A stretch of 63,487 bases of DNA, counting the filler, from Salisapilia sapeloensis CBS 127946 (taxonomy: Eukaryota; Protista; Oomycota), in NCBI GenBank assembly GCA_023334545.1. It is 11 parts of 11 records of this genome, joined end to end, with 100 filler letters (N's around TTAATTAATTAA, not from the genome) between each part and the next. Parts side by side here need not be neighbours in the genome. Positions count along the whole stretch, not along the records: positions 37,182 to 56,485 come from JAADVB010000310.1; 10 more parts are not named here. One strand, 5' to 3'. Under the pieces are notes generated by a model. It made no database searches and was not told the origin of the DNA. It saw only the letters and a program-made list of their open reading frames with translations. Each line of letters begins with the position of its first letter. Positions within the stretch are counted from its first letter, which is position 1. A program made the position numbers and the translations under genes. Positions 37,182 to 56,485 of the stretch are shown here, in pieces.

Positions 37182-37351
37182 CGTTACTTTAGGCTAGGTT
37201 GCTATCTTTTCTTTTGTTACTGTCTTTCTGGTTTGGTGCATGTTTAGATGACCTACTGCCTTGTCTGATATAAGATATACGTAGTACTTGTAGTCAGAAA
37301 GGATGTGTAAGTAGGGAGGATCGAAAGGACCAAATAAAATCACTTCTAGTT

Positions 37352-37861
37352 TTATTGAGCTTCCCCTATCGCACGTGTAAGCCAAACCCACGGGTAATAC
37401 GAGTCCCGTGACATCACTGCTCGTCCTTTTATGTGCACGTTGAGCTGACTCCACAGTGTTTTAATAATCTCTTGGAAGATATTACCACTGGCTATTGTCT
37501 CGCCTAAGAACTGAGTAGACAAGTCGTGCTGGCCGACGGTGAACTTAAAAAACGGCTGTACCTGAAGCCGATGATGGTGTTTTACCTGAGGCCGCTGATA
37601 ATAATGTTGTTGGGAGCTGACTGGAACTGGCGTTGAAGGACTAGTCCGTGTCTGTGCCATTAGTTGCGAGACGGCTGGACAGTTGGCACCAGGACATGGC
37701 GTGACAACGTGAGATCGAAGCCAAGGAGTCGATTGCGCAGGTGTCTTCCGCGCTTGCAGAGACGGTTGTTGGATCGCGCGCGTGCAGATGTGCACTGACG
37801 CTTCATGGCGTCTGCTCCTGCGACGTGTTTGTTGTTGATTGGTCTTTATTATGCTGCACAT
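37352..37861 (-). pseudogene. Possible transposon-associated hypothetical relic
   Basis: 169-aa ORF inside a TE-rich block; only a vague resemblance to repeated oomycete hypotheticals. Confidence 0.25.
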
Positions 37862-38425
37862 GAAGACGTTCTGCTGTGGGAATTGTCTCTTCGTCTATGA
37901 CAGCGCGGGAAACACCAATAAAAACAAATTGAACGTGCTTTCACAACTTTCCTACTACTAGATAAATACAAATATGAAGTAAGAGAGGTTTGAGCGATTT
38001 GCGCGCGATTTCTTCGTGGCAATAGAACCAATTGCGCACAGAAGTTTAAAGTAGAAAACCCAATAGGATTCCAAAGAGTTTAACACACTAATTACAAACC
38101 TTAAAAGAGCAAACTGACGATTTACTAAAACTGAGCTCACGCTAATTCTTAGAATCCCCAATTCAGCTAAAACTGATTTCCATTTCTGAGACGGCCCAAG
38201 AAGGGAACCCGGTACCAGAATCATACCAAACATTTGGGAACCGCAAATGTGAGCATTTGCAAGATTCGTTCATGGAAAACAGCTCCTTTAAACTTGAGTT
38301 TAGTATGTAATGCCAGGAGTTTCTTTCATGCAAAATTTCAGACTGACAACAACTTGGGCAAAATAAATAAAACTTGATTTGCATGGCGTCGGCAATCTCT
38401 CTGATGAAAAGTAGACGAGATTTGA

Positions 38426-39162
38426 ATGCGCAAGCAGTCTCTGCACACTACGCACGGGCATCTGCTTCTCAATAGACCTTCTGCTCCCCCGTGTATGACA
38501 GTACGCACGTCTCCACCGCCGTCAAAGACGCAATTGCCGGCTTCATTCAGAAAGACGGAGTCATTTTTCCCCGCACAGCCAACGAACGGTCTCTATTATT
38601 TGACTACAGAATTCGGATTTAGCGGGCTGGGGAAAATGGACCAGAGGTTGGCTGGATTTGTCTTGCAAATGCGGCTTGTCGACGAGCACGAGTCTTTCGC
38701 CGCATCATTCAGAATCGTACATCAAAAGCTACGGATCATTTGCGAACGGAACATGGCCTTACTTCACCCAAGACGACTCAACAGCAAGCTTTTAAACCCA
38801 GCATTGTCGACCTTGCGTCAAAGATTCGAGATTCAGCTTTGTATCGTGAAGATTCGATGCGATGCACATTTTTGATTATAACGCGAAACATTGTTAACAA
38901 CTGTCTACCGAATGTGTTTGCTGGGTAGGAAGAAATAATGTTGCTCACAAGATTGCTATGGAAGTAAACAATGAAGATGTTTAAAGCGAGAGATGTCACG
39001 CATTCAATGCTGAAAATGTGTGATATTACAAGAAAAGAGGTTGCCCAGCGACTCGAAGATGCCAAGACGCCCGGGTTGACCTCATTCACGATAATGTTCG
39101 ACTTTCCTACTTGTAAAACGAAGCACACGATGTTTTTTGAAGCTGCGTGTCTATTTCATTGA
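38426..39162 (+). pseudogene. Degenerate hAT-like DDE transposase fragment
   Basis: Frameshifted pieces ATDHLRTEHG, LYRED..., NNCLP, FTIMFDFPTCKT (resembles the D.WT first catalytic Asp of hAT transposases); in-frame stops. Confidence 0.6.
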
Positions 39163-39209
39163 TGCAGAGTAGAATTTTTAATCCATTTTACTTGACACTC
39201 GTCATTTCC

Positions 39210-39559
39210 TGCAACGGGAAGTTACATGAATGTATCCCAAGCTGAGGGAACATTCCGGATCTTGAAGTGGGTCCTTGTATTGGAGCATATGATGCTAACA
39301 CAAAGTTACAAGGAACATGAATGGTCGTTAGACCTTTCCATACTAAGATGAAGTTTAAGGAGATTGTATTAGGATTTAGTACGTATATAGAAACTCGAAG
39401 TCTAGTAGTCTGATTAAGCCTCAATACAATCGGTTCTCCTTTTGCTTTCTAAAGCACAAGTGTCTTACACTACTTCCGTACTTTTAGTACAAGAGTTTCA
39501 TACTCCGCGTTTTACGCTTCCCTTACGTTCAAAGGGCTATCGTTGTGACTTCTGTCACA
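39210..39559 (+). mobile_element. LTR copy 2 (350 bp, TG...CA), solo or 3' LTR
   Basis: Starts TGCAACGGGAAG, ends GTCACA; matches copies 1 and 3; no PBS or TSD seen. Confidence 0.9.
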
Positions 39560-40120
39560 CCACACGTGCGCTTAGTAAGTCAACTGCAAATTCTCTTCTG
39601 TATTCTGCTTATACAAATCTTAATTGCTGGCTATATTTTCTTGTTCAACTGTCTGTTGTGCTTTCTCATGTCATGTATCATCCACCATACTGTTGTACTA
39701 TCATCATCCATGTACTGAGTCTCAGACCGGTTCTCGACCCCTGAGGTGCCTAGGTCCAGGTCTTTCACCCTGGGGTCCTGATCCGGGCCTGGCCTTTCGT
39801 TCGCATTTCTCATCCCCGTTGTCCTGTGGCCCCTCTTGACCCTCCATACCATGCTAGCTCAGCGCCTTCCGTGTAAAAACTCGGAGCTCGGACTCATCAT
39901 CTCCAGTCTTTGGTGCTCTGGTCTGTTCTCAGCCCTGGAACTCGGGTCTAGTCCGGACCCAGACCTCCCTAGGACCCAGCTTCCGAAGTGGGACCTAGGC
40001 CCCTGGGCACTGGATTGGTCAAATTTCCTTTGCTTTTTCGACGTTCCTTCTGATCAGCTGACGTCCGTCGCTTCTCAGCTCAACGATATTCTGTCAGTTG
40101 CGAAAAATGATGCCACATAA

Positions 40121-41213
40121 TCACACTTGCACCCTGGCTCTTTTTCCCATTGCCTTCTTTTCTTTCCACTGTGCAACCTTCCGATCGCGAATGGCTATCT
40201 TTGCATGTTTCGATGTCGTCGGACAGCCTTGCAAATGGTGTGCCTGTCCACACGCCCAGCACGTTATTGGTCTACTGGGTTTACCATCGGACTTCGTAGT
40301 CGCAGTCTTGATTGGCTTTCTTTTGTCGGTAGTTTGCTGCGTAGGCTTCTTATGCTTGTCCAAACCATTCTTACCGAAAACTCGGTATTGTTGCTGGAGA
40401 TGTGCCTGAGCCAGTATCAGCTCATGCAATGCACCATCATCAGTCCTAGTTTTCCGATATTGGATTGCCATCAATTCTTTGATCTCATTGCGCAAGACTT
40501 CTGGGGCGACACCCTCGCGGAGCAATTTGCACCTACTTCGCATACAATCGTCGTACCCTTAATCTTCCATCGAGCCTGATTGAAGCCAATGTTCTAGCCT
40601 ATAGTCTTCCACCATCCGATCGAAGCCCATAAATACTTCACAACTATTGTGTTTATGTCTTTTTCTTTGAAGTCCATTTTGACGTTTTGTTTTATGAACC
40701 CAATTAGCTCAGAAAGTTTTCCATTTTAGCAGTTCCGATCCTTTTGACGATATGCTCGAGTAATAGCACATCCCTAATCTCTTTTGCAGGTTTCTTGATG
40801 ATGTAGTGCGCCAGATAGTCGACTAGGCGAGTACCAATCGAGTTTTTGGCCGAGATTACCACCACATGGTACTCTTCGCCCATGCAGGCGCACCGATACA
40901 TTACCTTCTGCTTATAGAGCTTACGCTCTCGGTTCCATGCCACAAAAGCACCATGGTCCCAAGATCTTAGTCTTGGAAGCGCCACAATTTTCCACATTTG
41001 TTGGGGAACCGTCATTTTCACATCGCTGGAACTATCTCCAAAGTTGAGGTTTAGACGGTTTGAGTCCATCTTAACTTTAGCTTCGGTATCCGTACGGTTC
41101 TCTCGAGTTGATTTGGTGCCAAAATCTTTGTAGCACAAGTTGGTATTGAAATGCTTGTTTGTATTTGCTGGTAAGAGCTGAAGTGAATATCTGTCTACTC
41201 TAATCCAGCTCAT
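40121..41213 (-). pseudogene. Frameshifted gag of an oomycete Ty3/gypsy-like retrotransposon
   Basis: LPRLRSWDH...W.RER, KMDFKEKDI, CKLL..GVAPEVL, zinc knuckle CWACGQAHHLQGC. Confidence 0.75.
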
Positions 41214-41319
41214 CCTCGGTCATTCTCGGTACCTTATCGAGGATGAGGCTAGATCTTGAATAGTCGTAATGTGAGTGAAGTATGATTGAAGTTGGAGTCG
41301 TGTTGGGATGTCCGTATTC

Positions 41320-42400
41320 ACAAGCCTTCACAGGCAGTGGCAGATCAAAGCGTTACAACAGTAGTATTCAACTCCAGTGGGAAGAGACCGACACTGTGTC
41401 CTTAAACAACCTGACGTCTGCCATCTGCCATCGCACAATCCGCCAAAGTATCCTTTCTATTGCCGACAGCCGAAGTCTGCATGTTTACGGATGCCTCAGA
41501 TGCTGGATGGGCCGTTATTCTCACCCAAGTTATCACGTGGAATCTTGAATTTCCAGTCGAAAAGCAGAGCCACCAACCGCTCTTGTGTTAAGGAGGATTA
41601 TTCAGTGCAAGCCAACTGCACTGGTCGATGGCTGAGAAAAAGGCTTATGAATTGAAACTAGATATTAGCAACTGGGACATTTTGCTGCCTCTAGTACAAG
41701 TTTGTCTAAACCATACATCAATCGAGAGCCTAGGGAATGTCAGCCCGACAGAGCTTTTTACAGGATACCAACCGCCTGAGCTCCTTCCACCCGTGGTCCT
41801 TCCTTCGAAATAAGAAGGTGGTGATCAACTTCAAAAAAAATTGATCCAGAAAGGCATGTCAAGCACGTGGACACCCTGCGCAACAGCCTTGTCAAAATAC
41901 ATGCCAAACACACAACAAGTCCGTGCCAAACAGAAGAAGAAGTCAAAGAAAAAGTCTGACGAACGAGTACATACAAAGCCGTTAAACCTGCATGAAGGTG
42001 ATTTCGTACTCTGGTCATGAGTCGACCCAAGACTTAACGCAAGCAAACTGACAGTCCGATGGGTTGGAACATTTCAAATGATCAAGGCTAAAGAGTATTC
42101 GTTCGAGATTTAGCATTTGCTGACACAAGAGCGCTACGAAGTTCACTCATTCAGGCTCAAATTGTATCATGATCGGTCACTGGATCTTACAGAGGAGCTG
42201 CGCGAATATGTCGCGCTGCAAGGTGTAGTACTCGGAGTTTGAGGCATCGTTTCTAACCGGTACAATGATGCAGTAGGCAAATGGAAAGTTCAAGTAGCGT
42301 GGATCGGCCTAGAGGATCACGAAAATTCATGTGAACCATTGAAGACGACCTCTCAGGATGTACCCAAGTTGCTACAAGCGTATCTGGACGGTACCCTCCA
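41320..42400 (+). pseudogene. Deleted/frameshifted Ty3/gypsy pol relic (RNase H, integrase end, chromodomain)
   Basis: VCMFTDASDAGWAVILTQV, HWSMAEKKAY, LLPLVQVCLNHT...SPTELFTG, VQVAWIGLEDHENS.EP...QDVP. Confidence 0.8.
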
Positions 42401-42472
42401 ATGATCCGACCCTTGAACATCTTCAAGAATAACATGCAACGAACTCCCCTTTACCGTCTTAAAAGAGGAAGT

Positions 42473-42691
42473 TGTGGCAGCTCAGAACATTAAGCCGTGG
42501 AAATGAAACCGACAGACAAGAAAATGAAGTAGGAACGAGAATAGATAACCACAAAAACCTCACTTGCATCTTTGGCAGCTACGACACACTACACTGCCTT
42601 TGATACAGTACTCCCTTTGAAACGTATCATATAAAAGGATAAATCGTGTATCGGTAATCCTTTGTAGTTGTTCCTATCAAATTTTGTATCA
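42473..42691 (+). mobile_element. Possible degenerate 3' LTR of the pol relic
   Basis: Purine tract AAAAGAGGAAG at 42461-42471 followed by TGTGG..., TATAAAA inside, ends ...TGTATCA; no second copy seen. Confidence 0.3.
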
Positions 42692-42841
42692 TATACCTTT
42701 TATAAGTGGCAGGCGTACAAAAATAAACCTAAATGCTTTGGAAACGGCTACCACTGCCGGATGCAAGAAGATTGTAACATGTATAGGTGCTCATATAAAG
42801 AGTGTTGACTGTATAAGTCTATCCGAAGTAAAAGAAAAAAG

Positions 42842-42914
42842 CACCCGCCGTGGGGCTCGAACCCACGACCACTGGCTTAAAAGGCCAGCGCTCTACCGAC
42901 TGAGCTAGACGGGT
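42842..42914 (-). tRNA. tRNA-Lys, anticodon UUU
   Basis: 73 nt cloverleaf: ACCCGTC/GGCGGGT acceptor stem, AGCTCAGTCGGTAGAGC D arm, CTGGC-CTTTTAA-GCCAG anticodon arm, GGTTCGAGCC T loop. Confidence 0.96.
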
Positions 42915-44008
42915 TGTATTAGATATTAGTAAACGTTACATAAATAAAATAAAATTATACCATACATTATTAAGAAGTTGAAATTTTTTAAATCTGACTA
43001 TGAACAACTACTTTGGGCGTGCGTGATGTGAATGTATATTATCTCTATTAAAAAGCCGCGCTCAAAATGTATGGTATAACTTTATATTACATAGAAGTTT
43101 GTGGGCTATGGAGGGCATCAACTTGAAAATCATTCTAGTTGCATTCAGATCTGCTTCTTATTCGACATCATCATTCTGAGCTTGTTCACTGTTCATCATT
43201 TTTGCCATGCTGCCTACCTAAGCTAAGAACAACAGCATGCATGCTGGAGCCACGTAGAACGAATCTGTATTCGGCAGTGAACAGCATGTCAATGACCTAC
43301 AGAAGGTATTCAAGGTGATATTACTGTGCTGCGTCTCCGATTTTGTGTCTTTTGGAGTCCCATATAGAGCTAAGATTGAGATGAAGTAAGCTTTTTATTG
43401 AGCTTCATCTCTACGGATGTAGTGCTCGCGTCAACTCTATTTTAACCGACCCATGACGTAGCAACTTTGCCGTATATGTTCATACTCCGCACGTAGAACC
43501 TACCGTTAGAGCGTGAGATTCATTGTCAGTACCTTGTAGTGGATTATACACTTTAAATCGATAGACACTCGTATCGATTGCACCTAGACAATTGCGTAGG
43601 TGTAGTCTATTTGCATTTAATCGCACCAAGTATGTTTCGTATTAGATTGGCAGTTATGACCACAAATTCTCTTTAGTACAAAGAAAGTTTGAATGCCATT
43701 AAATGCTATCCGGATTATCGCGAATGAGAGCTAGTAGCGAACAAAGCTTTGCTCTTAGCTAGAGCTGCTTGCATTAGACTTTCATTAAACAATCCTCTCG
43801 TTAGACAACTTTCACTGTTTCTCTTATCAGCTTTTGCAATGCCGAATAATAAATAGCTTTACTATACGTGTAAAAGCACAGGGTGCAATCTACTAGCTTC
43901 TAAAGCCAACATTTGCATTCGCTTGTCTCGGTTCCCACGTCGCCAAAAGCACCCATTTCAACGCTGTTTGCAGCTACTGTACCGTAAAAATGCACACTTT
44001 GTCCCACT

Positions 44009-45427
44009 ATGGCAACACTCGAAAAAAGCCACGCGATGGAGCGCGAAGAGGAGCACAGCGACGTTGAATTTGTCGACCAGCAGGCTGTCTTAGACGAAGG
44101 ACAGTCGCTCGGATATTCGACTGAAACGTCGTCATTGCCAGATATAAACACCAAGTCGCCTGGTGCCAGTGATGGAGAGTGGGAAGCGATCCCATTTCCA
44201 ACTGCCCATGAGGATGGCGAAAGTGAACCGATTCTGCCAGAATACATTGAACAGAACTCTACATCGAGTGCAAGCGACATCCGTTCTTTGGATAACAGGG
44301 AATTTGAAAACCCTCTTTCTGTCAATAGTAGCCTACCGACTACCATCGGCGTCCGTGGTCCGCTTTCCACCCCAGTCGCCACGACGGACGTTGAGAGTGA
44401 TGATGGGTTAGAGGATAAAGAAGACGCATTGAGTATCTCACCATCCCATCCGGACCGTTTTCTGGAAGAAGACGAGAGTGAACGGTCTTCGCTGCAGGAT
44501 GAAGTTCCAGAGCCCGATTGTGAGATGGACGGCCGGCATCGAGCTCTATCATCCCTGAACCTCTCTCCCGTCCGCAAGGTCAGCAAAGACATTATCCAGC
44601 TACCGGACGGTCATTTTCAAAAGGAAGTTTTGCAGGACAATTGGAGTCTCGACAGTGATGACTACTATGCCCATCTTTCCAGTCGGTACGCCACTCCGAA
44701 CGACAGTGTCCGTCCCAGGGACAAGGCGCAAGAGAACCGGATCGCTAGTTTAGAAAAGCAGGTACAGGCCTTGCAGCAGCAGTTGGAGATTAAGGAGCAA
44801 GAGAATAGTCGACATCGGAAACGGATTTATGATCTGGAGCTTCAGCAGCAAGCGGCAGCTGCGAGCGCATTGGACCAGCATGGTCATTGTCGAGAGCAGA
44901 GGCATGAGCTTTGGCGGACGATACGCAAGCTGACCCTTTTCGTAGACCACTTTCGACTGGCAAAGGAAGAGATGGAGCGGCAGCGAGACGATGCGATGGT
45001 GTCTGCCAATCGAGCGTGGGCAGAGAATGCGTTCCTGGCAGGTCACCAGAACCATCGGCAGAAGATCAAATACATGGAATCCATCAAGGAGGACAATCGG
45101 AGACTCCACAAGAAGGTCAACAGTCTTCGGTCTCAGCTCGCTTCTGCCACGGGAAAGTCTTTGGTCGCAGTCGATGCCCTCGTGTCGAGTGATGCTGACG
45201 AGAGTGAAGACTTGGTGGACGATCGAGGCCAAGTGGACATACCTTCAGAAGTGGAAGAGCCCGCTCAAAATCAGGTCGTTCGGAAACTGTGGCAGATGCA
45301 AGAGAGGACACACAAGTGCATAGAGGAGCTCGAGAACGAGCGAGCGGATGTTCAGCGGCGTCTTCGACACCCGTGGCGCTTCCAGACGCCTACCGAGGAG
45401 CAGACCAAAGTGGCAGGAGTCGTCTAG
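44009..45427 (+). CDS. Acidic/coiled-coil protein with HMMR/KIF15 C-terminal-like motif
   Basis: 472-aa ORF; FLAGHQNHRQKIKYMESIKEDNRRL resembles LLGHQNxxQKIxxxxxLKxEN. Confidence 0.7.
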   Translation: MATLEKSHAMEREEEHSDVEFVDQQAVLDEGQSLGYSTETSSLPDINTKSPGASDGEWEAIPFPTAHEDGESEPILPEYIEQNSTSSASDIRSLDNREFENPLSVNSSLPTTIGVRGPLSTPVATTDVESDDGLEDKEDALSISPSHPDRFLEEDESERSSLQDEVPEPDCEMDGRHRALSSLNLSPVRKVSKDIIQLPDGHFQKEVLQDNWSLDSDDYYAHLSSRYATPNDSVRPRDKAQENRIASLEKQVQALQQQLEIKEQENSRHRKRIYDLELQQQAAAASALDQHGHCREQRHELWRTIRKLTLFVDHFRLAKEEMERQRDDAMVSANRAWAENAFLAGHQNHRQKIKYMESIKEDNRRLHKKVNSLRSQLASATGKSLVAVDALVSSDADESEDLVDDRGQVDIPSEVEEPAQNQVVRKLWQMQERTHKCIEELENERADVQRRLRHPWRFQTPTEEQTKVAGVV

Positions 45428-45456
45428 TAAGATATCATTGGTCTAAATAAGAATAC

Positions 45457-46881
45457 ATGCGTGTGATTGGCGAAAACGTTCCTCGGAGTCCAGGAAGACA
45501 CGAACGCTCGATGGAGACCTCTGCGAGGCCATCCACAACCATGTCAGAGGTCAAAGCCGACGCTCCCGAATCTAATGCAGAAGTAAATAGCACCTTGTCT
45601 ACTTGTACTGAAAACGAAACTTCGGATCGGAGCGAAACACCTTTCCCAAGAACAAACATTCAAGAAGCAGCTATAAAGTCCTGGACGGATGCCAAATGGG
45701 GCAGGCTGCCGCCACTTCCAGAAGGATGGACACAAGTGCAGCACCATTCTGGACTACTGTGCTATTTCCATGCTGCTTCGAAAACAGTTAGCTGGTCTCG
45801 ACCATACGTGCCTGAGCTTCCGACGGAAGAGCACGAGTGGGTGAATGCCATCGCGACCCACGTGCCTTCCATGGACATTTTCGCTCGTTTCGCGCCAGTT
45901 AAAACAGTTTTCGGCCCGGCTTCCAAGGTATGGTGCATGGTCATAGCAGGTGCTCAAATGAACTGAAGAGTGCTCACAAGTCTATGCGTAGAACCGAAAG
46001 CGCTCTCGGTCTCCGTCCGATGTTGTGAGTCAAAAAAGCAAGACGGAAGAAGCCAAGACGGATGAAAGCAAGAGGGACGAAAGCAGTAAAGCTGCGATCT
46101 CTATTGAGCAGTACCATTCACAAAAGTCTAGTGCAGCGGCTGACTCCACCTCTGACGTCGTCCAGAACGAAACTATTCCAGAGCAAGCTCCTCCTCAAGC
46201 CTATCCACCACCGGACAATTCTCCTCTTGTACGTTTGATTTCCCTTTTGGTGTCGGCGTCATCTCATCTGAATAGAGCTACGACGAGTTCAAGACTCTTC
46301 CGATCGGAGACCCTCGGATCGTATCTGTACGTCTCACTCGTCTCCAAACTCACCACTCCTACTCACCATTCTGCCTAAAGAACTGCCTCCATCTGTCTTT
46401 TAAGACACCCGTCCAAGTGCTGCAAGAGTACCAGTCACGCAACCGTGGCATATCTGTCATCTACAATTGGAGAGAGACCGATGGCACCAAGGGCCGGCGC
46501 CTCTACAAGACTACTGTGACTGCTGCCAAACACGCTGCCGAGGTACATGTGCTAGCGATCCTATCTTGATGCGCACTGAGCCTCTGATCCGAGTAGGGTG
46601 TAGCGTCGTCGAAAAAGGCCTCCAAACAACTGGCAGCTCAGGCACTCCTTTCCATCTTGCATGGCGACTCCATCAGTACATACGTAGATGTCGTCCGATT
46701 TTACGAGCGACGCGAGAAGCCTGTGTCGCAGCCGTCACCTTACGCGCCCGTGGCTCATGTAGATCAGAGTTTGGCGAATTACCCTTTGCATCCAGCCTCT
46801 ATCGGTAATTACTCTTCGGGACCAGACAGGTACCCTGCGTGGGTACCTCCACGCTCTACGAAGAGACCGAGGAAGCGATAG
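45457..46881 (+). CDS. DGCR8/Pasha-like protein (WW/Rhed-like domain plus one dsRBD), 5 exons
   Basis: LPEGWTQVQHHSGLLCYFHAASKTVSWSRPY; introns 45928-45991, 46229-46275, 46327-46380 and 46543-46596 give DPRI...KTPVQVLQEYQSRNRG...SKKASKQLAAQALLSILH; start may be 45511 or 45541. Confidence 0.78.
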
Positions 46882-46947
46882 AGAGACAACGAAGACTTGG
46901 ATTGTCATATTTACAACGCAAGAAGAACGAATAATGAGAGTATCGTG

Positions 46948-47235
46948 CTATTTCGTGGCATCTTGAATCATCACTTTTAGCTGCTTGTTTTGCTGCTGTA
47001 TCTGTGCGTTCGTCTTGGCATCCGTGGCGTGCCGGATCTCGTCCTCTTCCCTCGCAAAGTTCTGCTCCGCTCGACCAGTGGCCCAGTTCATGATAAAGTA
47101 ACCGCAGACGACCGGTGCTGTAAAGTAGACGACGCCCATGAGCGTCCGGCCATTCTTGGACAGAGGGATGCGAGTGCTGTGGATCCTCTTCTTCAGTTGC
47201 TCGTGGCGTTCCCCGAGTCCGCGCAGGAAGTCCAT
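46948..47235 (-). CDS. Small single-TM hypothetical protein
   Basis: 95 aa from ATG 47235; TM LMGVVYFTAPVVCGYFIM; coiled tail. Confidence 0.7.
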   Translation of the reverse strand: MDFLRGLGERHEQLKKRIHSTRIPLSKNGRTLMGVVYFTAPVVCGYFIMNWATGRAEQNFAREEDEIRHATDAKTNAQIQQQNKQLKVMIQDATK

Positions 47236-47420
47236 TCGAATGTCCACAAATGCGTCCGACCTCCAAGTCTGTATGTCTCTTAGAACATATAATAGCATGT
47301 TTACAACTTCAAGAACATCATGAGAAGATCAGCTCTATCTCGACAACCAGACGATGGCCGGATGGAACGAGCGAGAGGCGTCAGACTTGACTCCAAGTTA
47401 CTCATTCAGCTCCATACGGA

Positions 47421-48038
47421 ATGGAGGGCTACCTGCTCGTGTTCTCTTCTTCCTCTTGTGCACGCCTGTGCTTTGGTGTCGTCGACAGTGGGCAGATTAA
47501 ACTACAGGACAAGCGCGACGGCGTCACGATCGCGTCCATCCCGCTGACAAAGCACAGTGTGCGCGTGACGGCGCTGAATGGAGGCATTCCGAACCAGTTC
47601 GTAGTACACACGCTGGCTTTAAAGCGCAGTGATACCATTGGCAAGTTTATTCCTGCCGCTGAAAAGGAGCGAGCGCACGTACTCGCCACGACGTCGACTA
47701 CCAACGTCCATCGATGGAGTCAAGCAGTCTTTAAGTGGCGAATGCAGGCGTTCAAGGAACCTCGAGAGGATGCTGCGCATTCAGAACGAGCAAAGCTTTT
47801 GGAGGACGAACGAAGGAGCGTGCTGCAGCTCGCATCTCGTTTCGAAGTGAATCTTTTGCCGACGCCCAAGCGACGAAAGCGTCGACGTCCGTCAGATATT
47901 GTTCGTTGGTCTCGAAAGGTAGGAAGCAAAGACGCCTTGATCCCTGTCGAGTACGCCTCCAGCAGCCGCGTCCAGCCTCAGTCGTGGCTGGGCAACTTGC
48001 TGTCGACGACGTCTACGCCGAGCGTGTCCTACCTCTAA
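47421..48038 (+). CDS. Hypothetical protein with PH-like N-terminal domain
   Basis: MEGYLLV start, beta-rich core, terminal helix with RW; 205 aa. Confidence 0.65.
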   Translation: MEGYLLVFSSSSCARLCFGVVDSGQIKLQDKRDGVTIASIPLTKHSVRVTALNGGIPNQFVVHTLALKRSDTIGKFIPAAEKERAHVLATTSTTNVHRWSQAVFKWRMQAFKEPREDAAHSERAKLLEDERRSVLQLASRFEVNLLPTPKRRKRRRPSDIVRWSRKVGSKDALIPVEYASSSRVQPQSWLGNLLSTTSTPSVSYL

Positions 48039-48100
48039 TCGTAAGAAATTATAAAGACGTAACTGCTGTGCCAATCTTCTTGTATTCTGCTTTGGTCATT

Positions 48101-49438
48101 CTAGAGGTAGAGTCCTTCCGGAATGTTCGCCTTCTTCTTATACAGAGCCTTCTCCTTGGCCTTGCGGAAGTCCTGCTGGGTGACGCGCATCCGACGCTCG
48201 CGAAGCGCCAAGAGACCTGCTTCGGTGCACACAGCCTTGATGTCGGCTCCAGACAGCTCGTCCTTGGCCATGACAAACTCCTCCAGATCCACATCTTCCG
48301 ACAGGTTCATGCGACCAGTGTGGATGTTGAAGATACGCCGCTTCGTCTTGATGTCCGGCAGCGGGAACTCGATCTTTCGGTCGATACGTCCAGGTCGGAT
48401 GAGTGCAGGGTCTAGGCTCTCGATGGCGTTCGTCGCCATGATCACCTTGACGTCTCCGCGCTCGTCAAAGCCGTCCAACTGGTTCAACAGCTCCAGCATC
48501 GTACGCTGAATTTCGCGCGTGCCTCCGCTGCTCGAGTCATATCGTTTGCTTCCCACAGCGTCGATCTCATCGATAAAGACGATGGAAGGAGCATGGTCGT
48601 CGGCCACTCGGAACATCTCGCGAACGAGCTTCGGGCCGTCGCCAAGGTATTTTTGGATGAGCTCCGAGCCGACGACACGGAGGAAGGTAGCAGACGTCTG
48701 GTTCGCCACAGCCTTGGCGAGCAGCGTCTTCCCCGTACCAGGCTCTCCGTACAGGATGACACCCTTTGGCGGACGAATACCGATGCCTTCGTAGAGCTCC
48801 GGATGCGTCAGGGGCAGCTCGACGGCCTCCTTGATCTCCTGAATCTGCGTCTCCAGACCTCCGATGTCCGCGTAAGACTCTAGCGGAGCCTTGTCGACCT
48901 TCATGACAGAGACCATGGGGTCCGTGTCGTCTCCCAAGATACCCACGACGGACATGACCTTGTTGTGGAGGAGCACCGAGGATCCAGGCTCGAGCATGTC
49001 CTGGTTCACAAACGACATGACACCGACGTAGTACTCTGGTCCGACGCTGGAAGATACGATCGCGTGGTTGTCGTCGATGAGCTCCTCGAGGGTGCCGACG
49101 CCCATGGGCGTTCCGCGCAAGTCGTCCACCTTGCTGCGCTCCTCTTCGTCCTTCTCCTGCTTGGGCTTGAGCACCTCCTGGTTCTGGATAAACTCTTGTT
49201 CCATGAGTAAATAGTCCTTAATGCGCTCGAGCTTGAGCAGACGGAGCTTGCACTTGGCCGTCGGGTAGACCGGCGGGATGCGGACGGCTGCCGACGGCCC
49301 CTTCTTCTTGCGCCGCTTGCGCGTCATGGCGCCGGCGCCCCTGGGCTCGAACTTCTTTTTCTTCTTGGCCTCCTCCTTCTTCTTGTTGGGGTCCTCTCGG
49401 CCGCCGCGCGGCGGCATGCCGCTCTGTCCTTGGCCCAT
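48101..49438 (-). CDS. RPT2: 26S proteasome regulatory AAA-ATPase subunit Rpt2 (S4/PSMC1)
   Basis: MGQGQS start, [18 protein letters not shown], Walker A GEPGTGKT, Walker B VFIDEID, C-terminal PEGLYL. Confidence 0.98.
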
Positions 49439-49925
49439 CTTCTCGCTCTCTTAGCTCTGGTCTTCTTCGAGGCGAAAGATCGATGCGCTTTTCAGCCAAT
49501 GAGACGACGCGAGATCCTGAAGCGGCATCGCGGATCTTCCATACTCACGCCGAGTACAATGCGCCCAGGAGCTACTTGACCGCTTGTCTGTAACGAGCTT
49601 TTACATTCAAAGAGCTCTGTTCTCTCGACACTTATGAGTGAACAGTCCAACTTACTCCTAGTCCGACCATCAAGTATACAAAACACACAATAGCTGGCAT
49701 GGAGAAGGCAGAAAGTTTTCGTTCTTGCCCCAGCTTGAAGTGGAGAAGAAAGGGATGAAGCGACCGTTTCGTTGCCTAATAAGAACGGCTCCACACGCGC
49801 AGAGAGGCAGTCAAGAGTCGACGCTGCGAGCACTCTGTTGTTGGACTGTATTCATACTCGCGCTCGGTCTCGCTATCCTGCTCGAACTGCTACTTCCCTA
49901 TTACAACTGGCCTCCACTCGACCGA

Positions 49926-51534
49926 ATGGAAAACATCTACCAGGCACTCGGCTCCAGCACGAGTTCCAGTGAACGGTCGAGACGGGCAAGCGCGACGTTC
50001 GAATCCAAACCTGTGACTAAAAGCATCGAGCCTTCGCCCGTTGCAACAGGAGATGGAGGTCGGCCAGGAACCTACTCGCTTGTCGTCTCTGGAACGACCT
50101 TTCACATCGACAACAAGTACAAATATCTCAAAGTCATCGGCCATGGAGCCTACGGAGTCGTCATGTACTCGCAATCTTCACCACTACGTAACTATTCATC
50201 TGACTTGTATGTTCTAGCTCGGCACTGGACACCGAGACAAACGATAAGGTGGCGATTAAGAAAATTCCAAAGGCATTCGACGATCTCGTCGACGCCAAGC
50301 GGATCCTGCGGGAAATCAAGCTCCTGCAGCACTTTGATCACGAAAACATTATTAATATTGTAGACCTCTCGCCTCCGCCTTCTGCGGAGGAATTTGAAGA
50401 CGTCTACATCATCTCGGACCTCATGGAAGCAGACATGCACCGGATCATCTACTCGTGCCAGCCGCTCACAGACGACCACGTCCAATACTTTCTCTACCAA
50501 GTAATGCTCTTCGCTACTTGAACTCAAAGTCATATCTAACGTTCTAATTTTCCTGCATCCACAGCTTCTTCGAGCGATCAAGTACATGCACTCGGCCAAC
50601 GTGCTGCATCGAGACCTCAAGCCTTCCAACCTTCTTCTGAACTCCAACTGCGACCTAAAAGTATGCGACTTTGGACTCGGCCGAGGCGTCGAACCGGATG
50701 AAAACAACACTGAGTTGACAGAATACGTCGTCACTCGATGGTATCGAGCCCCAGAGATCATGCTATCCATCAAAGAGTACTCAAAAGCCATTGACGTCTG
50801 GTCCGCCGGATGCATCTTCGCAGAGCTACTAGGTCGGAAACCTCTCTTCCCAGGCGACGACTATATCCACCAGCTCCAGCTCATCTGCGAGAAACTAGGC
50901 ACTCCTTCCGAGAGCGACATGCACTTCATCACGAACGACAAGGCTCTGCAGTTCATGCGCAAACAGCCCATTCGACCCGGTGTCAAGTTCCAGCGGCTGT
51001 ATCCGGATGCATCACCAGACGCCATCGACCTGCTGGAGCGCATGCTCATCTTTGATCCGTCCAAGCGCATCTCCATCACAGAAGCCCTTGCGCATCCGTA
51101 CCTAGAGTCACTCCACAGCGAAGATGACGAGCCTTGTGCCGACAGCGTCTTTAGCTTTGACTTTGAGCGAGAAGATCTGACTAAGGAGCGACTGCAAGAG
51201 CTAGTGTTAGAGTACGACGGAACCTTTCTAGTAGCCTGCACTCGTACTTAACCATCGTATTGGAGTAGAGAGGTGAGAACGTTTCATCCCGAAGCTCCTA
51301 GGAGGATCCGCGTGAAGCATCTGGACACCGAGGCTACAGAGACGGAGAGCGAGCCGAAAGAGACCCAAGTGCAGAGCCCACGGTATGCACCATCGATCCT
51401 TCATTCATGCTTGTGCTGCCTCAAATAAAGTACTGCGGACCGGTTTTGATACTTAATTGACCTCTTTCTATGCGTGCGATATGTGTTGCTCGACGTGAAG
51501 AATTACTGATGACGAGAAGAAAGCTCCAATGTAG
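49926..51534 (+). CDS. Mitogen-activated protein kinase (TEY type), multi-exon
   Basis: [38 protein letters not shown]; introns 50165-50217, 50501-50564, 51212-51268; last exon tentative; in-frame upstream ATG at 49755. Confidence 0.92.
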
Positions 51535-52295
51535 GCTCCTGGCGAAAAGTGCCCACGCGAGCGCAGAGCAACCCAACTATTCCTAATTGATTAATAGACA
51601 TAGTGAAAATCACTACCTGGTGTCCATCAATACGTCTAGAAAGATATACTCTATGCGATACACAGCGCTGTGGCCAAGAACAATAGACATACTCAAGCCA
51701 TCATCACTCTGTGTTAAACACTTGCAGACATGCAACTCGCAATGTAGCGATCTAGGCGCTTCTACGACAAAGCGTATGCGCCACCCTGGAGACAATGGGC
51801 GCTGGCATGCTTGATGGTATGTTGCAAGCAGGTCATCAAAGCAGGGACAAATGGGATTTGGAAAGTTGGGCTTCGCGTGCCAACTATGCGATTTACAAAA
51901 GTATTGAACGAAATACTTGCTTTGGTTAGATATCGTCGTTCGCGCATCAGGCTACCTTATAAACATAGCTGCTTGAAGCAAAACGACAGCTACTTGCAAT
52001 GGACGATAACGAATATGCGTACGAAGCGATGCTGGTGTAGTCAATTTTTTCATCGTACACCAATCTGTGCAATTGACGGTACTTGCTAAAGACTGTAGGC
52101 AGTATATTTGATGCTGCGACAGCATGCACTCGGTAAGTCTGTTCTCACGAATAAGAGTTGTAGTGGCGACAGAGCAATCCGAATTTCCATCTGTCGGGAA
52201 AGCGTGCCTTTGTCGATCACATCCGATCTACCGAGCCAGCATGGTCCAAGCCCCAGCTTATTACTCACTGGCAATGCACCAAACGGAGATAGAAA

Positions 52296-52313
52296 GCTCA
52301 TTATTCAATTTGC
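52296..52313 (+). promoter_or_regulatory. Oomycete-type INR + FPR core promoter element
   Basis: GCTCATTATTCAATTTGC about 35-50 bp upstream of the pectate lyase ATG; matches GCTCATT initiator plus MWTTTNC. Confidence 0.7.
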
Positions 52314-52347
52314 TCTCAACTTTTAATTCAAAGATCTTCAACTTAAA

Positions 52348-53118
52348 ATGAAAGCTGTCTCCACTTCCATCGCTGCTATCTTCGCCTCGGTCGCTGCTGT
52401 GAACGCTGCTTCCATTCCAGACGGCACATGGCCTCAAAGTACGGGTACCGTTGAGCACAACGGCGTCATTGTCGTCCGCTCTGGCGAAACCTTCGACGGG
52501 AAGATGCAGACGTACCAGCGTTCCGACATGGGATGCAGTGAACAAGCGGAAGGCACGTGGCGCGACGCCATGTTCAGGTTGGAAGCTGGTGCCACCCTCA
52601 AGAATGTCATCATCGGTGAGAACCAGGCGGAGGGTGTCCACTGCAACGATCACGACTGCAACTTGGAGAACGTCTGGTGGGACGATGTCTGTGAAGATGC
52701 GTGGACGATCAAGAACGGAAAGTCATCCAGTGTGTCCAAAATCTCCGGCGGTGGTGCTCGTTACGCAGAGGACAAGGTGGTCCAATTCAATGGCGAAGGT
52801 CTGGTCGTTATCGACAACTTTTACGTCGAGGACTTTGGAAAGCTCGCTCGTTCGTGTGGTACCTGCGGTGACAAGCAGCGTAACTTTGAGATCTCCAATG
52901 TGTTGGCCGTCGATCCTAAAGTTTCTCTCGTCACTGTGAACGAAAACTTTGGTGATACCGCAACGTTGAAAAACATCCATATCAAATCCGACGACGACGA
53001 CGTGACGGTGTGCGCGTGGAGCAAAGGTACCAGCCACGGCGAGCCAGACGAGCTTGGAGAAGGCATCAAGAAGGGACTTTGCAACTACTCTGAGAGCGAC
53101 ATCCACATCAACGAGTAA
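52348..53118 (+). CDS. Secreted pectate lyase, polysaccharide lyase family 3
   Basis: Signal peptide; GATLKNVIIG, EGVHC, NVWWDDVCEDA, DKVVQFNG, FGKLARSCG; 256 aa. Confidence 0.95.
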   Translation: MKAVSTSIAAIFASVAAVNAASIPDGTWPQSTGTVEHNGVIVVRSGETFDGKMQTYQRSDMGCSEQAEGTWRDAMFRLEAGATLKNVIIGENQAEGVHCNDHDCNLENVWWDDVCEDAWTIKNGKSSSVSKISGGGARYAEDKVVQFNGEGLVVIDNFYVEDFGKLARSCGTCGDKQRNFEISNVLAVDPKVSLVTVNENFGDTATLKNIHIKSDDDDVTVCAWSKGTSHGEPDELGEGIKKGLCNYSESDIHINE

Positions 53119-54878
53119 ATGGAGTCGGTTTTATCAATCGCGTAAACAAATTCATCCCTTTTAATTCAGCAATCTTTGTTCCTCCGACTATACGACCATC
53201 AGTACTAGACCGAGATATGTTGATGTCTACGCAAAGATGGAATTGTAAGAGCTTGCTATCCTACGCTGCGTCCACCTATGGGGTGCATCGATAGATTCGA
53301 GGGTGACATGCTAACCAAATTCAAGGTACATACTATTCGTCTTAGCTTTCGTTTGTTCACATCTTGAATTTAATACGCTTAACGTGCCAAGTGTGTAGCT
53401 AGTGCGAATGCGTAAGGCCGCTCCAAGCCCAAACTAAGCGTAACGTTGCTAAGTTACCACAATAAAGTTTTATTACATCCAGGAAAGGCAAATGAAAATT
53501 GGACTACATAAATATATTTAAGAGATAGTCGTATCATTTCGAAACAAAGTAGAGCTTCTTACATCGCGAAGGGCATCAACTTTGGCAACTTTAATCAGCT
53601 ATGATACTGTGTGTTATTCAAGATACTCTACGTTTTACATTGGCTCTTAATTGAAGATTTGTCTGTAGCAATTATGATCGAGCTTTTTCAACCTCGTTGC
53701 AACTAGTTATCTAAGAGATGGCATTCAAAGGAGCATGCTTAACCTATAAATTGTGGTAAAAACAGAAGTGTGCATTTTCCACGCTACAAGCTGAAAGAAA
53801 TATATGCGTTGGATCGAGAAGTCACTAATATGCATAGCGTCAGATGCGGCTACTGCGTACACTTAAGCATAACACCTCAAGGATATGCGATCGATCAAAC
53901 CACCATGAGCGCGGCCAAAATTGGTGTGACACGCGCTTTGTCATTTAGGATGACTATATGGTAAAGCACACGACTAAATTTGGCTCTTGGTATCCTCTTC
54001 ACTTTCGTGTAGAGCTCATATTGTAGAGTTGTTTCGTGTGTAGCGAACAGTGTCGGTAAAGCTTTCCATCAAAGGTGCAGACCCCCTTTAGGTAAACGAC
54101 ATCTAGCCGTGCCGAGCGTAATCTACTTTCGATATCCTTGGTCAATAGTCATACCCTGGGCCATCGTTCAGCAAAGAGTAATTCCAAAGTTGTCCTTCGT
54201 ATACTACCAGGTGCCACGACCAACAGCACGATGATGCTATCCGGATGTACGATTTTGTCACTGCAGTAGCCCGAATCGTTAAACGTCCACATGAACATTT
54301 CGCTTATTACTTACACCTAGAGTTGGATGATTCATGGCAACTACTCGAAGTTGAAAGCGATATACGTGGCCTAGAATAGCCCAGCTCGCACATCCGGTTA
54401 CGTGGGCACAATCGAAGATCGTATGATGCCGTGGACTATCTTGCATTAATCGTGCCACAGGCACTGCACTCACTACGAACCTAGAGAGCACAACACAGAA
54501 GTACGCAATTCGTAATGGCTATCCTATGTATGCTTGGAATGGCTCTATTCAAATTTACGCGCGCTGCTTCGATATGTACTTAACCATTTTGATGTAGTCG
54601 ATTAAGAGGTTGACATATATGCCATTAGTCTAGACCATGCCATTCACACTCATGTCGTTTCTACGTCTAGCGCGTTAACTTCCTGGCTCAAGCTACTGTG
54701 GAGTAATGTCGATGATGTATAGAGAAGTCCACACTGGTCGGCTAAAGTCAGATGACTCACTGGATCGAAAACTGATCTGGTCTGGTAAGCACGCAAAGTC
54801 TTTCGCTCCATTTGCTTCAGCCTCACGTCCATTCTACAAATTGCATCTCATCGAAAAGACTCGACAGTCTCAAACACG

Positions 54879-56135: not shown

Positions 56136-56274
56136 ACGACTTCAGATATTACGCTTTGAGATCGCAGCTTCAACAATGCAACTTCAATACGTTAATCTTA
56201 ATCTTGGTGACTTCATCATGAGGATGGCCAGCGATCATAGACTGATAATCACAGTCCTAGAGTAGATATCATGC

Positions 56275-56485
56275 TCAATCCGTTAAACTTAAAGGATTGG
56301 TTTCACTTTGAACTTCATGATGCTTGAGTTTTAATCCCATCCCGTTGGACGTGTCTGCCGGCATGGAGAAGCCTTGGGACATCAGCATGTTGTGCGTCGG
56401 CATCTGGGCACTCCCATTGGACGCGTCACCGGCAGGGCGTTGGCCGGCAGCATCTCGTAGCATCGAATGAAAGCTATCCATGGTC
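56275..56485 (-). CDS. Possible C-terminal fragment of a gene cut by the gap
   Basis: Open frame running into the gap; GC-rich; no motif. Confidence 0.2.

What the first reader, a model, noticed from the sequence alone, without database searches (positions are those of the whole stretch)
45457..46881. Spliced DGCR8/Pasha-like gene in an oomycete: WW/Rhed-like domain plus a dsRBD2-like domain, apparently lacking dsRBD1 and the heme Cys
Seen: four GT-AG introns join fragments the ORF track shows separately into one protein containing LPEGWTQVQHHSGLLCYFHAASKTVSWSRPY...HVPSMDIF and EFKTLPIGDPRIVSNCLHLSFKTPVQVLQEYQSRNRG...GVASSKKASKQLAAQALLSILHGDSISTYVDVVRFY. Recalled knowledge: these resemble the DGCR8 WW/Rhed segment (LPEGW...HNSG..YLH...V.WSRPY...H.P) and specifically its second dsRBD (I.D.RV...SP.QIL.E...RN.G...KQLASQKIL.LLH...Y). 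The Drosha-Pasha Microprocessor is usually treated as animal/holozoan. Inference: this could be the partner of a Drosha-like oomycete RNase III, in a minimal form with one dsRBD and no Cys at the IPC heme-ligand position. I cannot tell whether this has already been annotated in other oomycetes.
Basis: partly seen in the sequence, partly recalled or inferred. Interest (0 to 1): 0.8.

Follow-up and report, generated by a model that had tools for sequence, protein, structure and literature searches.

The report
Pasha/DGCR8-like gene in an oomycete
This is a real, spliced and transcribed oomycete gene for a trimmed-down relative of DGCR8/Pasha, the RNA-binding partner of Drosha in animal microRNA processing; that protein family is usually regarded as confined to animals and their closest unicellular relatives.

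Summary
Five exons (45457/45511-46881, + strand) are joined by four GT..AG introns of 64, 47, 54 and 54 nt. All four joints lie on a single RNA-derived contig, so the WW and dsRBD exons share one transcript.

The product is 401 aa, or 383 aa from the more likely start at 45511. It has a DGCR8-type WW domain, a low-complexity linker and one dsRBD.

The DGCR8 reading also holds:
- Exon 1 alone has DGCR8's dimerization domain as its best PDB match (E 9e-8).
- Exon 5 alone has DGCR8 dsRBD2 plus its C-terminal helix as its best match.
- A profile of 13 oomycete orthologs hits DGCR8 at E 1.5e-31; the next family, Staufen, scores 4.5e-10.
- Saprolegniales and Albugo orthologs keep both dsRBDs and align colinearly with the DGCR8 core (E 1e-40).

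The window's protein lacks dsRBD1, the heme-ligand Cys, the rest of the Rhed domain and any recognisable Drosha-binding tail.

Orthologs occur across oomycetes but are annotated only as hypothetical, DRBM or WW proteins. No paper in the searchable library links oomycetes to Pasha/DGCR8, although oomycete DCL2 is repeatedly called Drosha-like.

Partnership with an RNase III enzyme is inferred, not shown.

The parts
45483..47000 (+). Transcribed region seen in RNA-run contigs. The contigs run on past 47000, the end of the stretch laid.
   Evidence: the X1 contig starts at 45483 and the X3 contig at 45503. Word depth is about 45, similar to the neighbouring gene.
45457..45927 (+). Exon 1, coding. 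The first ATG is at 45457; ATG 45511 is the first start codon inside the observed transcript.
45715..45807 (+). WW domain of DGCR8 type (aa 87-117, L-P-E-G-W ... W-S-R-P-Y).
   Evidence: Pfam WW, aa 87-116; the best PDB match is the DGCR8 dimerization domain 3le4, E 9.3e-8. AlphaFold2 pLDDT is 92-96 over this part.
45856..45885 (+). T-H-V-P-S-M-D-I-F-A motif. It aligns with DGCR8's K-H-x-P-P-L-S-S-I-P-C segment. No Cys stands at or near the heme-ligand position.
   Evidence: alignments with oomycete orthologs and animal DGCR8.
45928..45991 (+). Intron 1 (64 nt, GT..AG).
   Evidence: joint present in X1 and X3.
45992..46228 (+). Exon 2. It encodes a low-complexity Ser/Pro/Lys/Glu linker that starts with a basic, NLS-like N-R-K-R-S-R. 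It stands where Saprolegniales and Albugo orthologs have dsRBD1.
46229..46275 (+). Intron 2 (47 nt, GT..AG). It is spliced in X3 and retained in the X1 contig; retention shifts the frame before the dsRBD.
46276..46326 (+). Exon 3. It encodes the N-terminal extension of the dsRBD (F-K-T-L-P-I-G-D-P-R-I-V), which matches DGCR8's F-N-H-I-S-I-E-D-S-R-V-Y.
46327..46380 (+). Intron 3 (54 nt, GT..AG).
46381..46542 (+). Exon 4. It encodes the first helix and the three strands of the dsRBD.
   Evidence: dsrm profile positions 1-38.
46543..46596 (+). Intron 4 (54 nt, GT..AG).
46597..46881 (+). Exon 5. It encodes the second dsRBD helix (K-K-A-S-K-Q-L-A-A-Q), the DGCR8-like extra C-terminal helix (46672-46716), a Pro/Tyr-rich tail, a terminal K-R-P-R-K-R and the stop codon.
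   Evidence: dsrm profile positions 46-66; the best PDB match is the DGCR8 core 2yt4, residues 178-220..

Best explanation
**What it is.** The locus is an expressed five-exon gene for an oomycete member of the DGCR8/Pasha protein family, in a reduced form. The parts are a DGCR8-type WW dimerization domain, a disordered basic linker, and a single dsRBD. That dsRBD corresponds to DGCR8's second dsRBD and carries its characteristic N-terminal extension and C-terminal helix.

**What is shown.**
- The gene structure and a single transcript.
- Specific homology to DGCR8.
- Presence of the family across oomycetes.
- Loss of dsRBD1 in this lineage.
- Absence of the heme-ligand Cys.

**What is inferred.**
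- The protein dimerizes through the WW domain, without heme. This would give two dsRBDs per dimer.
- It enters the nucleus through its basic motifs.
- It binds double-stranded or hairpin RNA.
- It serves as the RNA-recognition cofactor of an RNase III enzyme in small-RNA biogenesis. The most plausible partner is the Drosha-like DCL2 that all examined oomycetes carry.
For: **Gene model and transcript:**

**The window's own sequence against PDB.**
- Exon 1 best matches DGCR8 3le4 (E 9.3e-8), ahead of NEDD4L and YAP.
- Exon 5 best matches DGCR8 2yt4 (E 0.0038), over the end of dsRBD2 plus the following helix.

**Membership of the oomycete family.**
- BLASTP E 1e-51 to the Globisporangium ortholog over aa 85-343.
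- E 2e-13 and 1e-9 to Phallusia DGCR8 for the dsRBD and the WW domain. These E-values are for a small local database.

**Family profiles against PDB.**
- 13 oomycete sequences: DGCR8 at E 1.5e-31 (113 bits), against Staufen at 4.5e-10.
- The two-dsRBD forms: DGCR8 at E 1.3e-40, with one colinear 110.7-bit stretch across dsRBD1, linker, dsRBD2 and helix. DGCR8 dsRBD1 (1x47) scores 1.3e-16.

**Other lines of evidence.**
- Language-model features place the Saprolegnia ortholog nearest the DGCR8 / 'partner of drosha' clusters.
- Foldseek with the AlphaFold2 model of that ortholog ranks DGCR8 chains first (1e-14), with TRBP next at 1e-6.
- The G-W of L-P-E-G-W is conserved. In C. elegans Pasha these residues are needed for dimerization and Microprocessor assembly (PMC12219410).
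- Oomycete DCL2 is reported as most similar to Drosha and present in all oomycetes examined (PMC10080066; PMC4791657; PMC12857978).
- All four exon-5 differences in a related organism's contig are synonymous (codon phase read).
Against: - No interaction or activity data exist.
- The window's protein lacks several features of the animal protein: the heme Cys, the C-terminal half of Rhed, dsRBD1 and any recognisable Drosha-binding tail.
- A conserved C-terminal motif in other oomycete orthologs resembles DGCR8's tail only by eye. It has no significant PDB match and is absent here.
- Bollmann et al. argue that DCL2 has a PAZ domain and is functionally more Dicer-like than Drosha-like.
- The window's sequence sits on a long branch (1.17 changes per column), which could mean a changed or relaxed function.
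- The genome's RNase III genes could not be examined.
Confidence: 0.6

Rival explanations
1. It is a true DGCR8 homolog but not a Drosha-type partner. It might work with the canonical Dicer-like DCL1, as HYL1, TRBP or Loquacious do. Or it might act in another nuclear RNA process such as snoRNA or rRNA processing or exosome targeting, roles also reported for DGCR8.
For: - No recognisable Drosha-binding tail in the window's protein.
- DCL2 is said to have a PAZ domain and to be Dicer-like in function.
- DGCR8 has non-canonical roles, for example with the RNA exosome (title and abstract of PMC12862392).
Against: - The family co-occurs with a Drosha-like DCL2 throughout oomycetes, according to the literature.
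- The conserved WW G-W motif is tied to Microprocessor assembly in C. elegans.
- Nothing here points specifically to DCL1.
Confidence: 0.3
2. The resemblance to DGCR8 is convergent. An unrelated WW domain and an ordinary dsRBD were combined independently in oomycetes.
For: WW and dsRBD are both common, mobile domains. Pfam scores for the window's exon pieces are weak (13.9 to 14.8 bits).
Against: - DGCR8 is the best match separately for the WW exon, for the dsRBD C-terminal exon, and for both dsRBDs of the longer orthologs. Domain order and spacing are the same.
- DGCR8-specific flanks are shared: H-x-P-P-L after the WW domain, the extension before dsRBD2 and the helix after it.
- DGCR8 scores 113 to 143 bits, against 37 to 42 bits for the next family.
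Confidence: 0.03
3. In this particular organism the gene is a decaying remnant that has lost dsRBD1 and the C-terminal motif and no longer has a function.
For: - Long branch.
- Only 35 to 39% identity to Phytophthora and Pythium orthologs.
- An intron-2-retaining contig that would truncate the protein before the dsRBD.
Against: - The reading frame is intact across five exons and the splice sites are precise.
- Contig depth (a poor measure of expression) is about that of the neighbouring gene's contig.
- The conserved residues of the WW domain and the dsRBD are kept.
- Only synonymous differences are seen in exon 5 of a relative.
- Phytophthora, Peronospora and Globisporangium orthologs also lack dsRBD1 yet are well conserved.
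Confidence: 0.05

Closest known systems
DGCR8 / Pasha (Microprocessor cofactor of animals and Ichthyosporea)
   Same: - The WW domain shares L-P-E-G-W ... V-(S/T)-W-S-R-P-Y, followed by an H-x-P-(P/S) motif.
- The dsRBD is of the dsRBD2 type, with the same N-terminal extension and the same extra C-terminal helix.
- Saprolegniales and Albugo orthologs have the full WW, dsRBD1, dsRBD2 order, colinear with the DGCR8 core.
   Different: - No Cys at the heme-ligand position.
- No counterpart of Rhed beyond the WW subdomain.
- An extra helix of about 12 aa between the WW domain and the H-V-P motif.
- dsRBD1 is missing in the window and in the Peronosporales and Pythiales orthologs examined.
- No recognisable Drosha-binding tail.
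- About half the length (383 to 401 aa against 773 aa).
- The host is a stramenopile, not a holozoan.
Dicer-partner dsRBD proteins (HYL1/DRB1, DRB4, TRBP, PACT, Loquacious, R2D2)
   Same: They are dsRBD cofactors of RNase III enzymes in small-RNA biogenesis. That is the same general way of working proposed here.
   Different: - They have no WW domain.
- They score far lower against the oomycete profiles: TRBP 24 bits, PACT 27 bits, HYL1 22 bits, against 113 to 143 bits for DGCR8.
Staufen dsRBD3/4
   Same: It is the next-best dsRBD family by profile score (42 bits).
   Different: - The match covers only the second helix of the dsRBD.
- It has no WW domain and no DGCR8-type flanks.
Drosha-like RNase III of non-animals (oomycete DCL2; Plasmodiophora PbDRL)
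   Same: This is the class of enzyme that a Pasha-like protein would be expected to assist. It is reported in all oomycetes examined and in a rhizarian.
   Different: It is the putative partner, not a relative. No such gene lies in the window, and none of these papers mentions a Pasha/DGCR8 partner.

Membership tests
DGCR8/Pasha | WW-containing dimerization domain at the start of Rhed | tested here: met
   - Window exon 1 best matches PDB 3le4 and 4e5r (E 9e-8 and 3e-7).
- The oomycete profile scores 39 bits on the DGCR8 WW domain.
- The fold match of the window's AlphaFold2 model to 4e5r and 3le4 ranks first but is weak (E 0.04).
DGCR8/Pasha | Heme-ligand cysteine (I-P-C motif; Cys352 in human DGCR8, numbering from my own knowledge) | tested here: not met
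   - The aligned segment is V-P-S-M-D-I-F-A-R in the window.
- No oomycete ortholog has Cys at that column.
- Four of five Saprolegniales orthologs have a Cys two residues further on (G-C-G-M).
DGCR8/Pasha | Remainder of the RNA-binding heme domain (about 140 aa after the WW subdomain) | tested here: not met
   In the profile alignment, roughly 190 DGCR8 residues between the WW subdomain and dsRBD2 (about 388-580, that is the rest of Rhed plus dsRBD1) stay unaligned. The window has a 79-aa low-complexity linker instead.
DGCR8/Pasha | Two tandem dsRBDs | tested here: not met
   - The window has one dsRBD only, and no dsRBD1 is encoded anywhere in the piece.
- The feature is met in the Saprolegnia, Achlya, Thraustotheca, Aphanomyces and Albugo orthologs.
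DGCR8/Pasha | dsRBD2 with its N-terminal extension and extra C-terminal helix | tested here: met
   - Profile positions 177-307 align to DGCR8 586-716 at 57 bits.
- Window exon 5 matches 2yt4 residues 178-220.
- The window's dsRBD scores 27.9 bits on dsRBD2 against 6.0 bits on dsRBD1 of Saccoglossus DGCR8.
DGCR8/Pasha | C-terminal tail that binds Drosha | tested here: inconclusive
   - The window's protein ends in a Pro/Tyr-rich tail plus K-R-P-R-K-R.
- Other oomycete orthologs share a C-terminal L-K-S-E-L-R-K-S-L or V-T-A-N-L-R-N-Q-M motif. By eye this recalls DGCR8's L-A-K-L-Q-E-E-M-R-K-M, but it has no significant PDB match.
DGCR8/Pasha | Forms a complex with Drosha and supports cleavage of hairpin primary transcripts | not testable with these tools
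   This needs co-purification, cleavage assays or small-RNA sequencing of mutants.
DGCR8/Pasha | A Drosha-type RNase III in the same genome | not testable with these tools
   Only 19.3 kb of the genome is available. The literature reports a Drosha-like DCL2 in all oomycetes examined.
Generic WW-domain adaptor proteins (NEDD4, YAP type) | WW domain more similar to PPxY-binding WW domains than to DGCR8 | tested here: not met
   DGCR8 entries rank above NEDD4L and YAP for the window's exon 1. With the family profile the gap is wider: 45 bits against 29 bits.

The most novel reading that the evidence does not exclude
Oomycetes carry a working two-part Microprocessor-like module: a Drosha-like DCL2 plus this Pasha/DGCR8 homolog. 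If so, the Drosha-Pasha partnership is not an innovation of animals and their closest unicellular relatives. It would either date back to a much deeper eukaryotic ancestor and have been lost many times, or have crossed between holozoans and stramenopiles by ancient gene transfer. The single-dsRBD, heme-free form in this window would then be a natural minimal Pasha.
Probability: 0.35. Interest if true: 0.85.

Novelty: new variant of a known kind. Interest (0 to 1): 0.7.

Why it matters
The Microprocessor (Drosha plus Pasha/DGCR8) is treated as specific to animals and, since 2018, to Ichthyosporea (PMC6206976).

Oomycete papers list DCL1, a 'Drosha-like' DCL2, AGOs, RDR and Exportin-5. They name no Pasha.

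A clear DGCR8 homolog conserved across oomycetes gives DCL2 a candidate partner. It also makes the origin of the Microprocessor directly testable outside Holozoa.

The family offers natural reduced versions of DGCR8: no heme ligand, and one dsRBD in some lineages. These bear on which parts of DGCR8 are essential.

There is a practical side too. The family is a previously unlisted component of small-RNA pathways in a group that includes major plant and animal pathogens.

Tried and rejected
1. **Word-indexed homolog searches.** They say nothing about distribution outside oomycetes.
2. **Exhaustive HMMER search with exon 1.** It was dominated by multi-WW repeat proteins. Only a local re-scan with the full model picked out proteins that have both WW and dsRBD.
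3. **Taxonomy by structure.** The AlphaFold DB cluster search gave no usable taxonomy because the organism column is blank for every hit.
4. **Atlas search with the window's WW region.** It returned only generic WW clusters.
5. **C-terminal motif profile against PDB.** There was no significant hit, so homology to the Drosha-binding tail is not claimed.
6. **Fold search with the window's WW model.** The DGCR8 dimerization domain ranks first, but not significantly (E 0.04).
7. **Steps not run because the spliced protein has no reference.** The window's full spliced protein could not be handed to the structure, family or cluster tools. Typing its 401 letters was avoided. Exon pieces and orthologs were used instead, and the joined protein was analysed only in scripts.
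8. **Organism look-up.** An exact-match look-up of a neighbouring ORF found no record.

Full report
**1. The observation**

Reading 45200-47200 and joining the five proposed exons gives an uninterrupted 1206-nt coding sequence of 401 codons. The exons are 45457-45927, 45992-46228, 46276-46326, 46381-46542 and 46597-46881.

The four introns are 64, 47, 54 and 54 nt long. Each begins with GT and ends with AG.

Contigs of two runs labelled 'RNA?' from one organism were laid on 45300-47000 (run search, laying).
- Joints appear at exactly these four places.
- In run X3 all four lie on one 1523-nt contig, so the WW exon and the dsRBD exons belong to one transcript.
- The X1 contig keeps intron 2. 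That would shift the frame before the dsRBD.
- The upstream gene's contig ends at 45463, and this gene's contigs begin at 45483 and 45503.
- The ATG at 45457 therefore probably lies outside the transcript. The likely start is ATG 45511, giving 383 aa.
- A weakly matching run from a related organism carries four differences in exon 5. Read against the codon phase, all four are synonymous.

**2. Domains of the window's own protein**

Pfam on the exon pieces finds three things.
- A WW domain at aa 87-116.
- The first 38 positions of the dsRBD profile in exon 4.
- The last 21 positions of the dsRBD profile in exon 5.

The dsRBD therefore exists only after splicing.

The stretch between the WW domain and the dsRBD is a 79-aa Ser/Pro/Lys/Glu-rich linker that opens with a basic N-R-K-R-S-R. 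The protein ends in K-R-P-R-K-R.

A profile of dsRBD1, built from orthologs that have it, finds nothing in the six-frame translation of the whole piece 37182-56485. The absence of a first dsRBD is real.

**3. Is it DGCR8-like?**

*The window's own exons against PDB.*
- Exon 1 alone has the DGCR8 dimerization domain as its best match (3le4 at E 9.3e-8, frog 4e5r at 2.8e-7). Both rank ahead of NEDD4L and YAP.
- Exon 5 alone has the DGCR8 core as its best match (2yt4 at E 0.0038). The alignment covers the last helix of dsRBD2 and the extra helix that follows it.
- Exon 4 alone gives only insignificant dsRBD matches.

*Finding the family.* An exhaustive HMMER search with exon 1 was re-scanned locally with the full spliced model. 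This picked out proteins matching both the WW domain and the dsRBD. By their database records they are:
- oomycete proteins from Saprolegnia, Achlya, Aphanomyces, Globisporangium, Plasmopara and [Pythium] brassicae;
- two proteins named as animal DGCR8 (Saccoglossus, Phallusia), plus an insect protein (Lutzomyia) annotated only as a DRBM protein but carrying the DGCR8 I-P-C motif.

A further search added about 25 orthologs from Phytophthora, Peronospora, Hyaloperonospora, Pythium and Albugo. All are annotated only as hypothetical, DRBM-domain or WW-domain proteins.

The window's protein matches the Globisporangium ortholog at E 1e-51 over aa 85-343. It is only 35 to 39% identical to any ortholog.

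*Profile and structure tests.*
- A profile of 13 oomycete orthologs hits DGCR8 at E 1.5e-31 (113 bits). The next family, Staufen, scores 4.5e-10 and NEDD4L scores 4.5e-6.
- That alignment includes the H-x-P-P-L motif after the WW domain, the extension before dsRBD2 and the helix after it.
- A profile of the six two-dsRBD orthologs hits DGCR8 at E 1.3e-40. One colinear stretch of 110.7 bits runs across dsRBD1, linker, dsRBD2 and helix. The isolated DGCR8 dsRBD1 (1x47) scores 1.3e-16.
- Language-model features put the Saprolegnia protein nearest the DGCR8 / 'partner of drosha' clusters.
- Foldseek with its AlphaFold2 model (the domains at pLDDT 80-90) ranks DGCR8 chains first at 1e-14 to 1e-11, with TRBP next at 1e-6.
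- An AlphaFold2 model of the window's own WW region is confident (pLDDT 92-96). Its top PDB matches are the two DGCR8 dimerization-domain entries, but not significantly (E 0.04).

I conclude that the family is homologous to DGCR8/Pasha and that the window's gene is a member of that oomycete family.

**4. How it differs from DGCR8**
- In alignments with animal DGCR8, the I-P-C heme-ligand segment corresponds to I-F-A-R in the window. No oomycete ortholog has a Cys in that column. Four of five Saprolegniales orthologs have a Cys two residues later.
- The rest of Rhed has no counterpart.
- Oomycetes have an extra helix of about 12 residues between the WW domain and the H-V-P motif.
- dsRBD1 is present in the Saprolegniales and Albugo orthologs. 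It is absent from the window and from the Phytophthora, Peronospora, Hyaloperonospora and Globisporangium orthologs aligned.
- In a dsRBD2 tree the window groups with Albugo (support 84/87) inside the Peronosporomycete group, on a long branch. If that placement is right, dsRBD1 was lost more than once. Long-branch attraction cannot be excluded.
- Most full-length orthologs end in a conserved amphipathic motif. By eye it recalls DGCR8's Drosha-binding tail, but it gives no significant PDB match. The window's protein lacks it.

**5. Context**

The upstream ORF (44009-45427) has an HMMR_C coiled-coil domain. It matches the N-terminal half of the 941-aa Plasmopara model at E 3e-17. The partial [Pythium] brassicae model has the same HMMR_C-then-WW arrangement.

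Gene order is therefore conserved. This supports an oomycete origin for the window. Those two public models are probably fusions of two neighbouring genes, since in the window the two genes are covered by separate RNA contigs, with an uncovered gap at 45464-45482.

**6. Likely mechanism**

Established points from the literature:
- DGCR8 dimerizes through the WW region, binds the hairpin stem with its dsRBDs and anchors to Drosha.

The window keeps L-P-E-G-W, the second Trp, and the K-K-x-x-K of the second dsRBD helix.

I infer a heme-free dimer that presents two dsRBDs, is imported into the nucleus through its basic motifs, and hands double-stranded or hairpin RNA to an RNase III enzyme.

Three papers describe oomycete DCL2 as most similar to, or grouping with, Drosha. 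One of them stresses its PAZ domain and a Dicer-like function.

My estimates:
- homology to DGCR8: about 0.95;
- an RNase III cofactor role: about 0.6;
- pairing specifically with DCL2: about 0.4.

**7. Novelty**

Full-text searches found no paper describing a Pasha/DGCR8 homolog in oomycetes. The searches paired oomycete, Phytophthora, Saprolegnia and stramenopile with DGCR8, Pasha and Microprocessor.

The 2018 paper that extended the Microprocessor to Ichthyosporea states that it had not been found outside animals. A 2026 study of a Drosha-like enzyme in Plasmodiophora mentions no Pasha partner.

The library misses most subscription journals. Automatic family assignments in InterPro or PANTHER could not be checked.

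**8. Distribution beyond oomycetes is unresolved**

A GC-rich metagenome contig (L001) encodes pieces of a WW domain, a dsRBD1 and a dsRBD2, including an L-R-P-E-A-R-S-W-G-E-L-L helix very like DGCR8's. Its organism is unknown.

The tools that could have given taxonomy were saturated or gave no organism names.

Noticed in passing
window 44009-45427 (+): The upstream gene encodes a 472-aa coiled-coil protein with an HMMR_C domain. It matches the N-terminal half of the Plasmopara halstedii 941-aa 'WW domain' model, and the [Pythium] brassicae partial model has the same layout. Those public models therefore look like fusions of two neighbouring genes. Here the two genes are covered by separate RNA contigs, with a short uncovered gap between them.
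   Followed up: partly
window 46229-46275: Intron 2 (47 nt) is retained in the run X1 contig but spliced in X3. Retention would shift the frame and give a WW-only protein without the dsRBD. This could be an alternative isoform or an assembler's path choice.
   Followed up: no
window 48101-49438 (-): An intron-free ORF of 445 aa with a proteasomal ATPase OB domain, an AAA domain and an AAA lid. This is a 26S proteasome regulatory ATPase. No identical product is on record in the public collection.
   Followed up: partly
L001:350-2700 (JGI metagenome 3300048856, contig Ga0496066_006785): A GC-rich (60%), intron-bearing eukaryotic contig encodes pieces of a DGCR8-type WW region, a dsRBD1 and a dsRBD2, including a DGCR8-like C-terminal helix. 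They are preceded by a Cys/His-rich segment that looks like a PBZ-type zinc finger. The organism is unknown. It may mark another lineage with a Pasha-like gene.
   Followed up: partly
orthologs P0044, P0059, P0103, P0139, P0153-P0167 (C-termini): Most full-length oomycete orthologs end in a conserved amphipathic motif. Saprolegniales have L-K-S-E-L-R-K-S-L; Phytophthora and Peronospora have R-V-T-A-N-L-R-N-Q-M. By eye it resembles DGCR8's Drosha-binding tail, but it gives no significant match. It is absent from the window's protein.
   Followed up: partly
alignments A1 and A5; window 45715-45807: Nearly all oomycete orthologs have a Cys in the second strand of the WW domain (G-L-x-C-Y/F), where DGCR8 has Leu or Val. 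Four of five Saprolegniales orthologs also have a Cys (G-C-G-M) two residues after the column of DGCR8's heme Cys. Whether either binds a cofactor is unknown.
   Followed up: no
P0175 (Albugo laibachii) and P0181 (Thraustotheca clavata): The Albugo model has both dsRBDs but no WW domain at its N-terminus. The Thraustotheca model carries an extra BSD domain. Both look like gene-model errors rather than real architectures.
   Followed up: no
window 46516-46715, run X5 (organism B): A contig from a related organism is colinear with the genome across intron 4, so it is unspliced RNA or DNA. It differs at nine positions: one at the end of exon 4, four in the intron and four in exon 5. All four exon-5 differences are synonymous.
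   Followed up: partly
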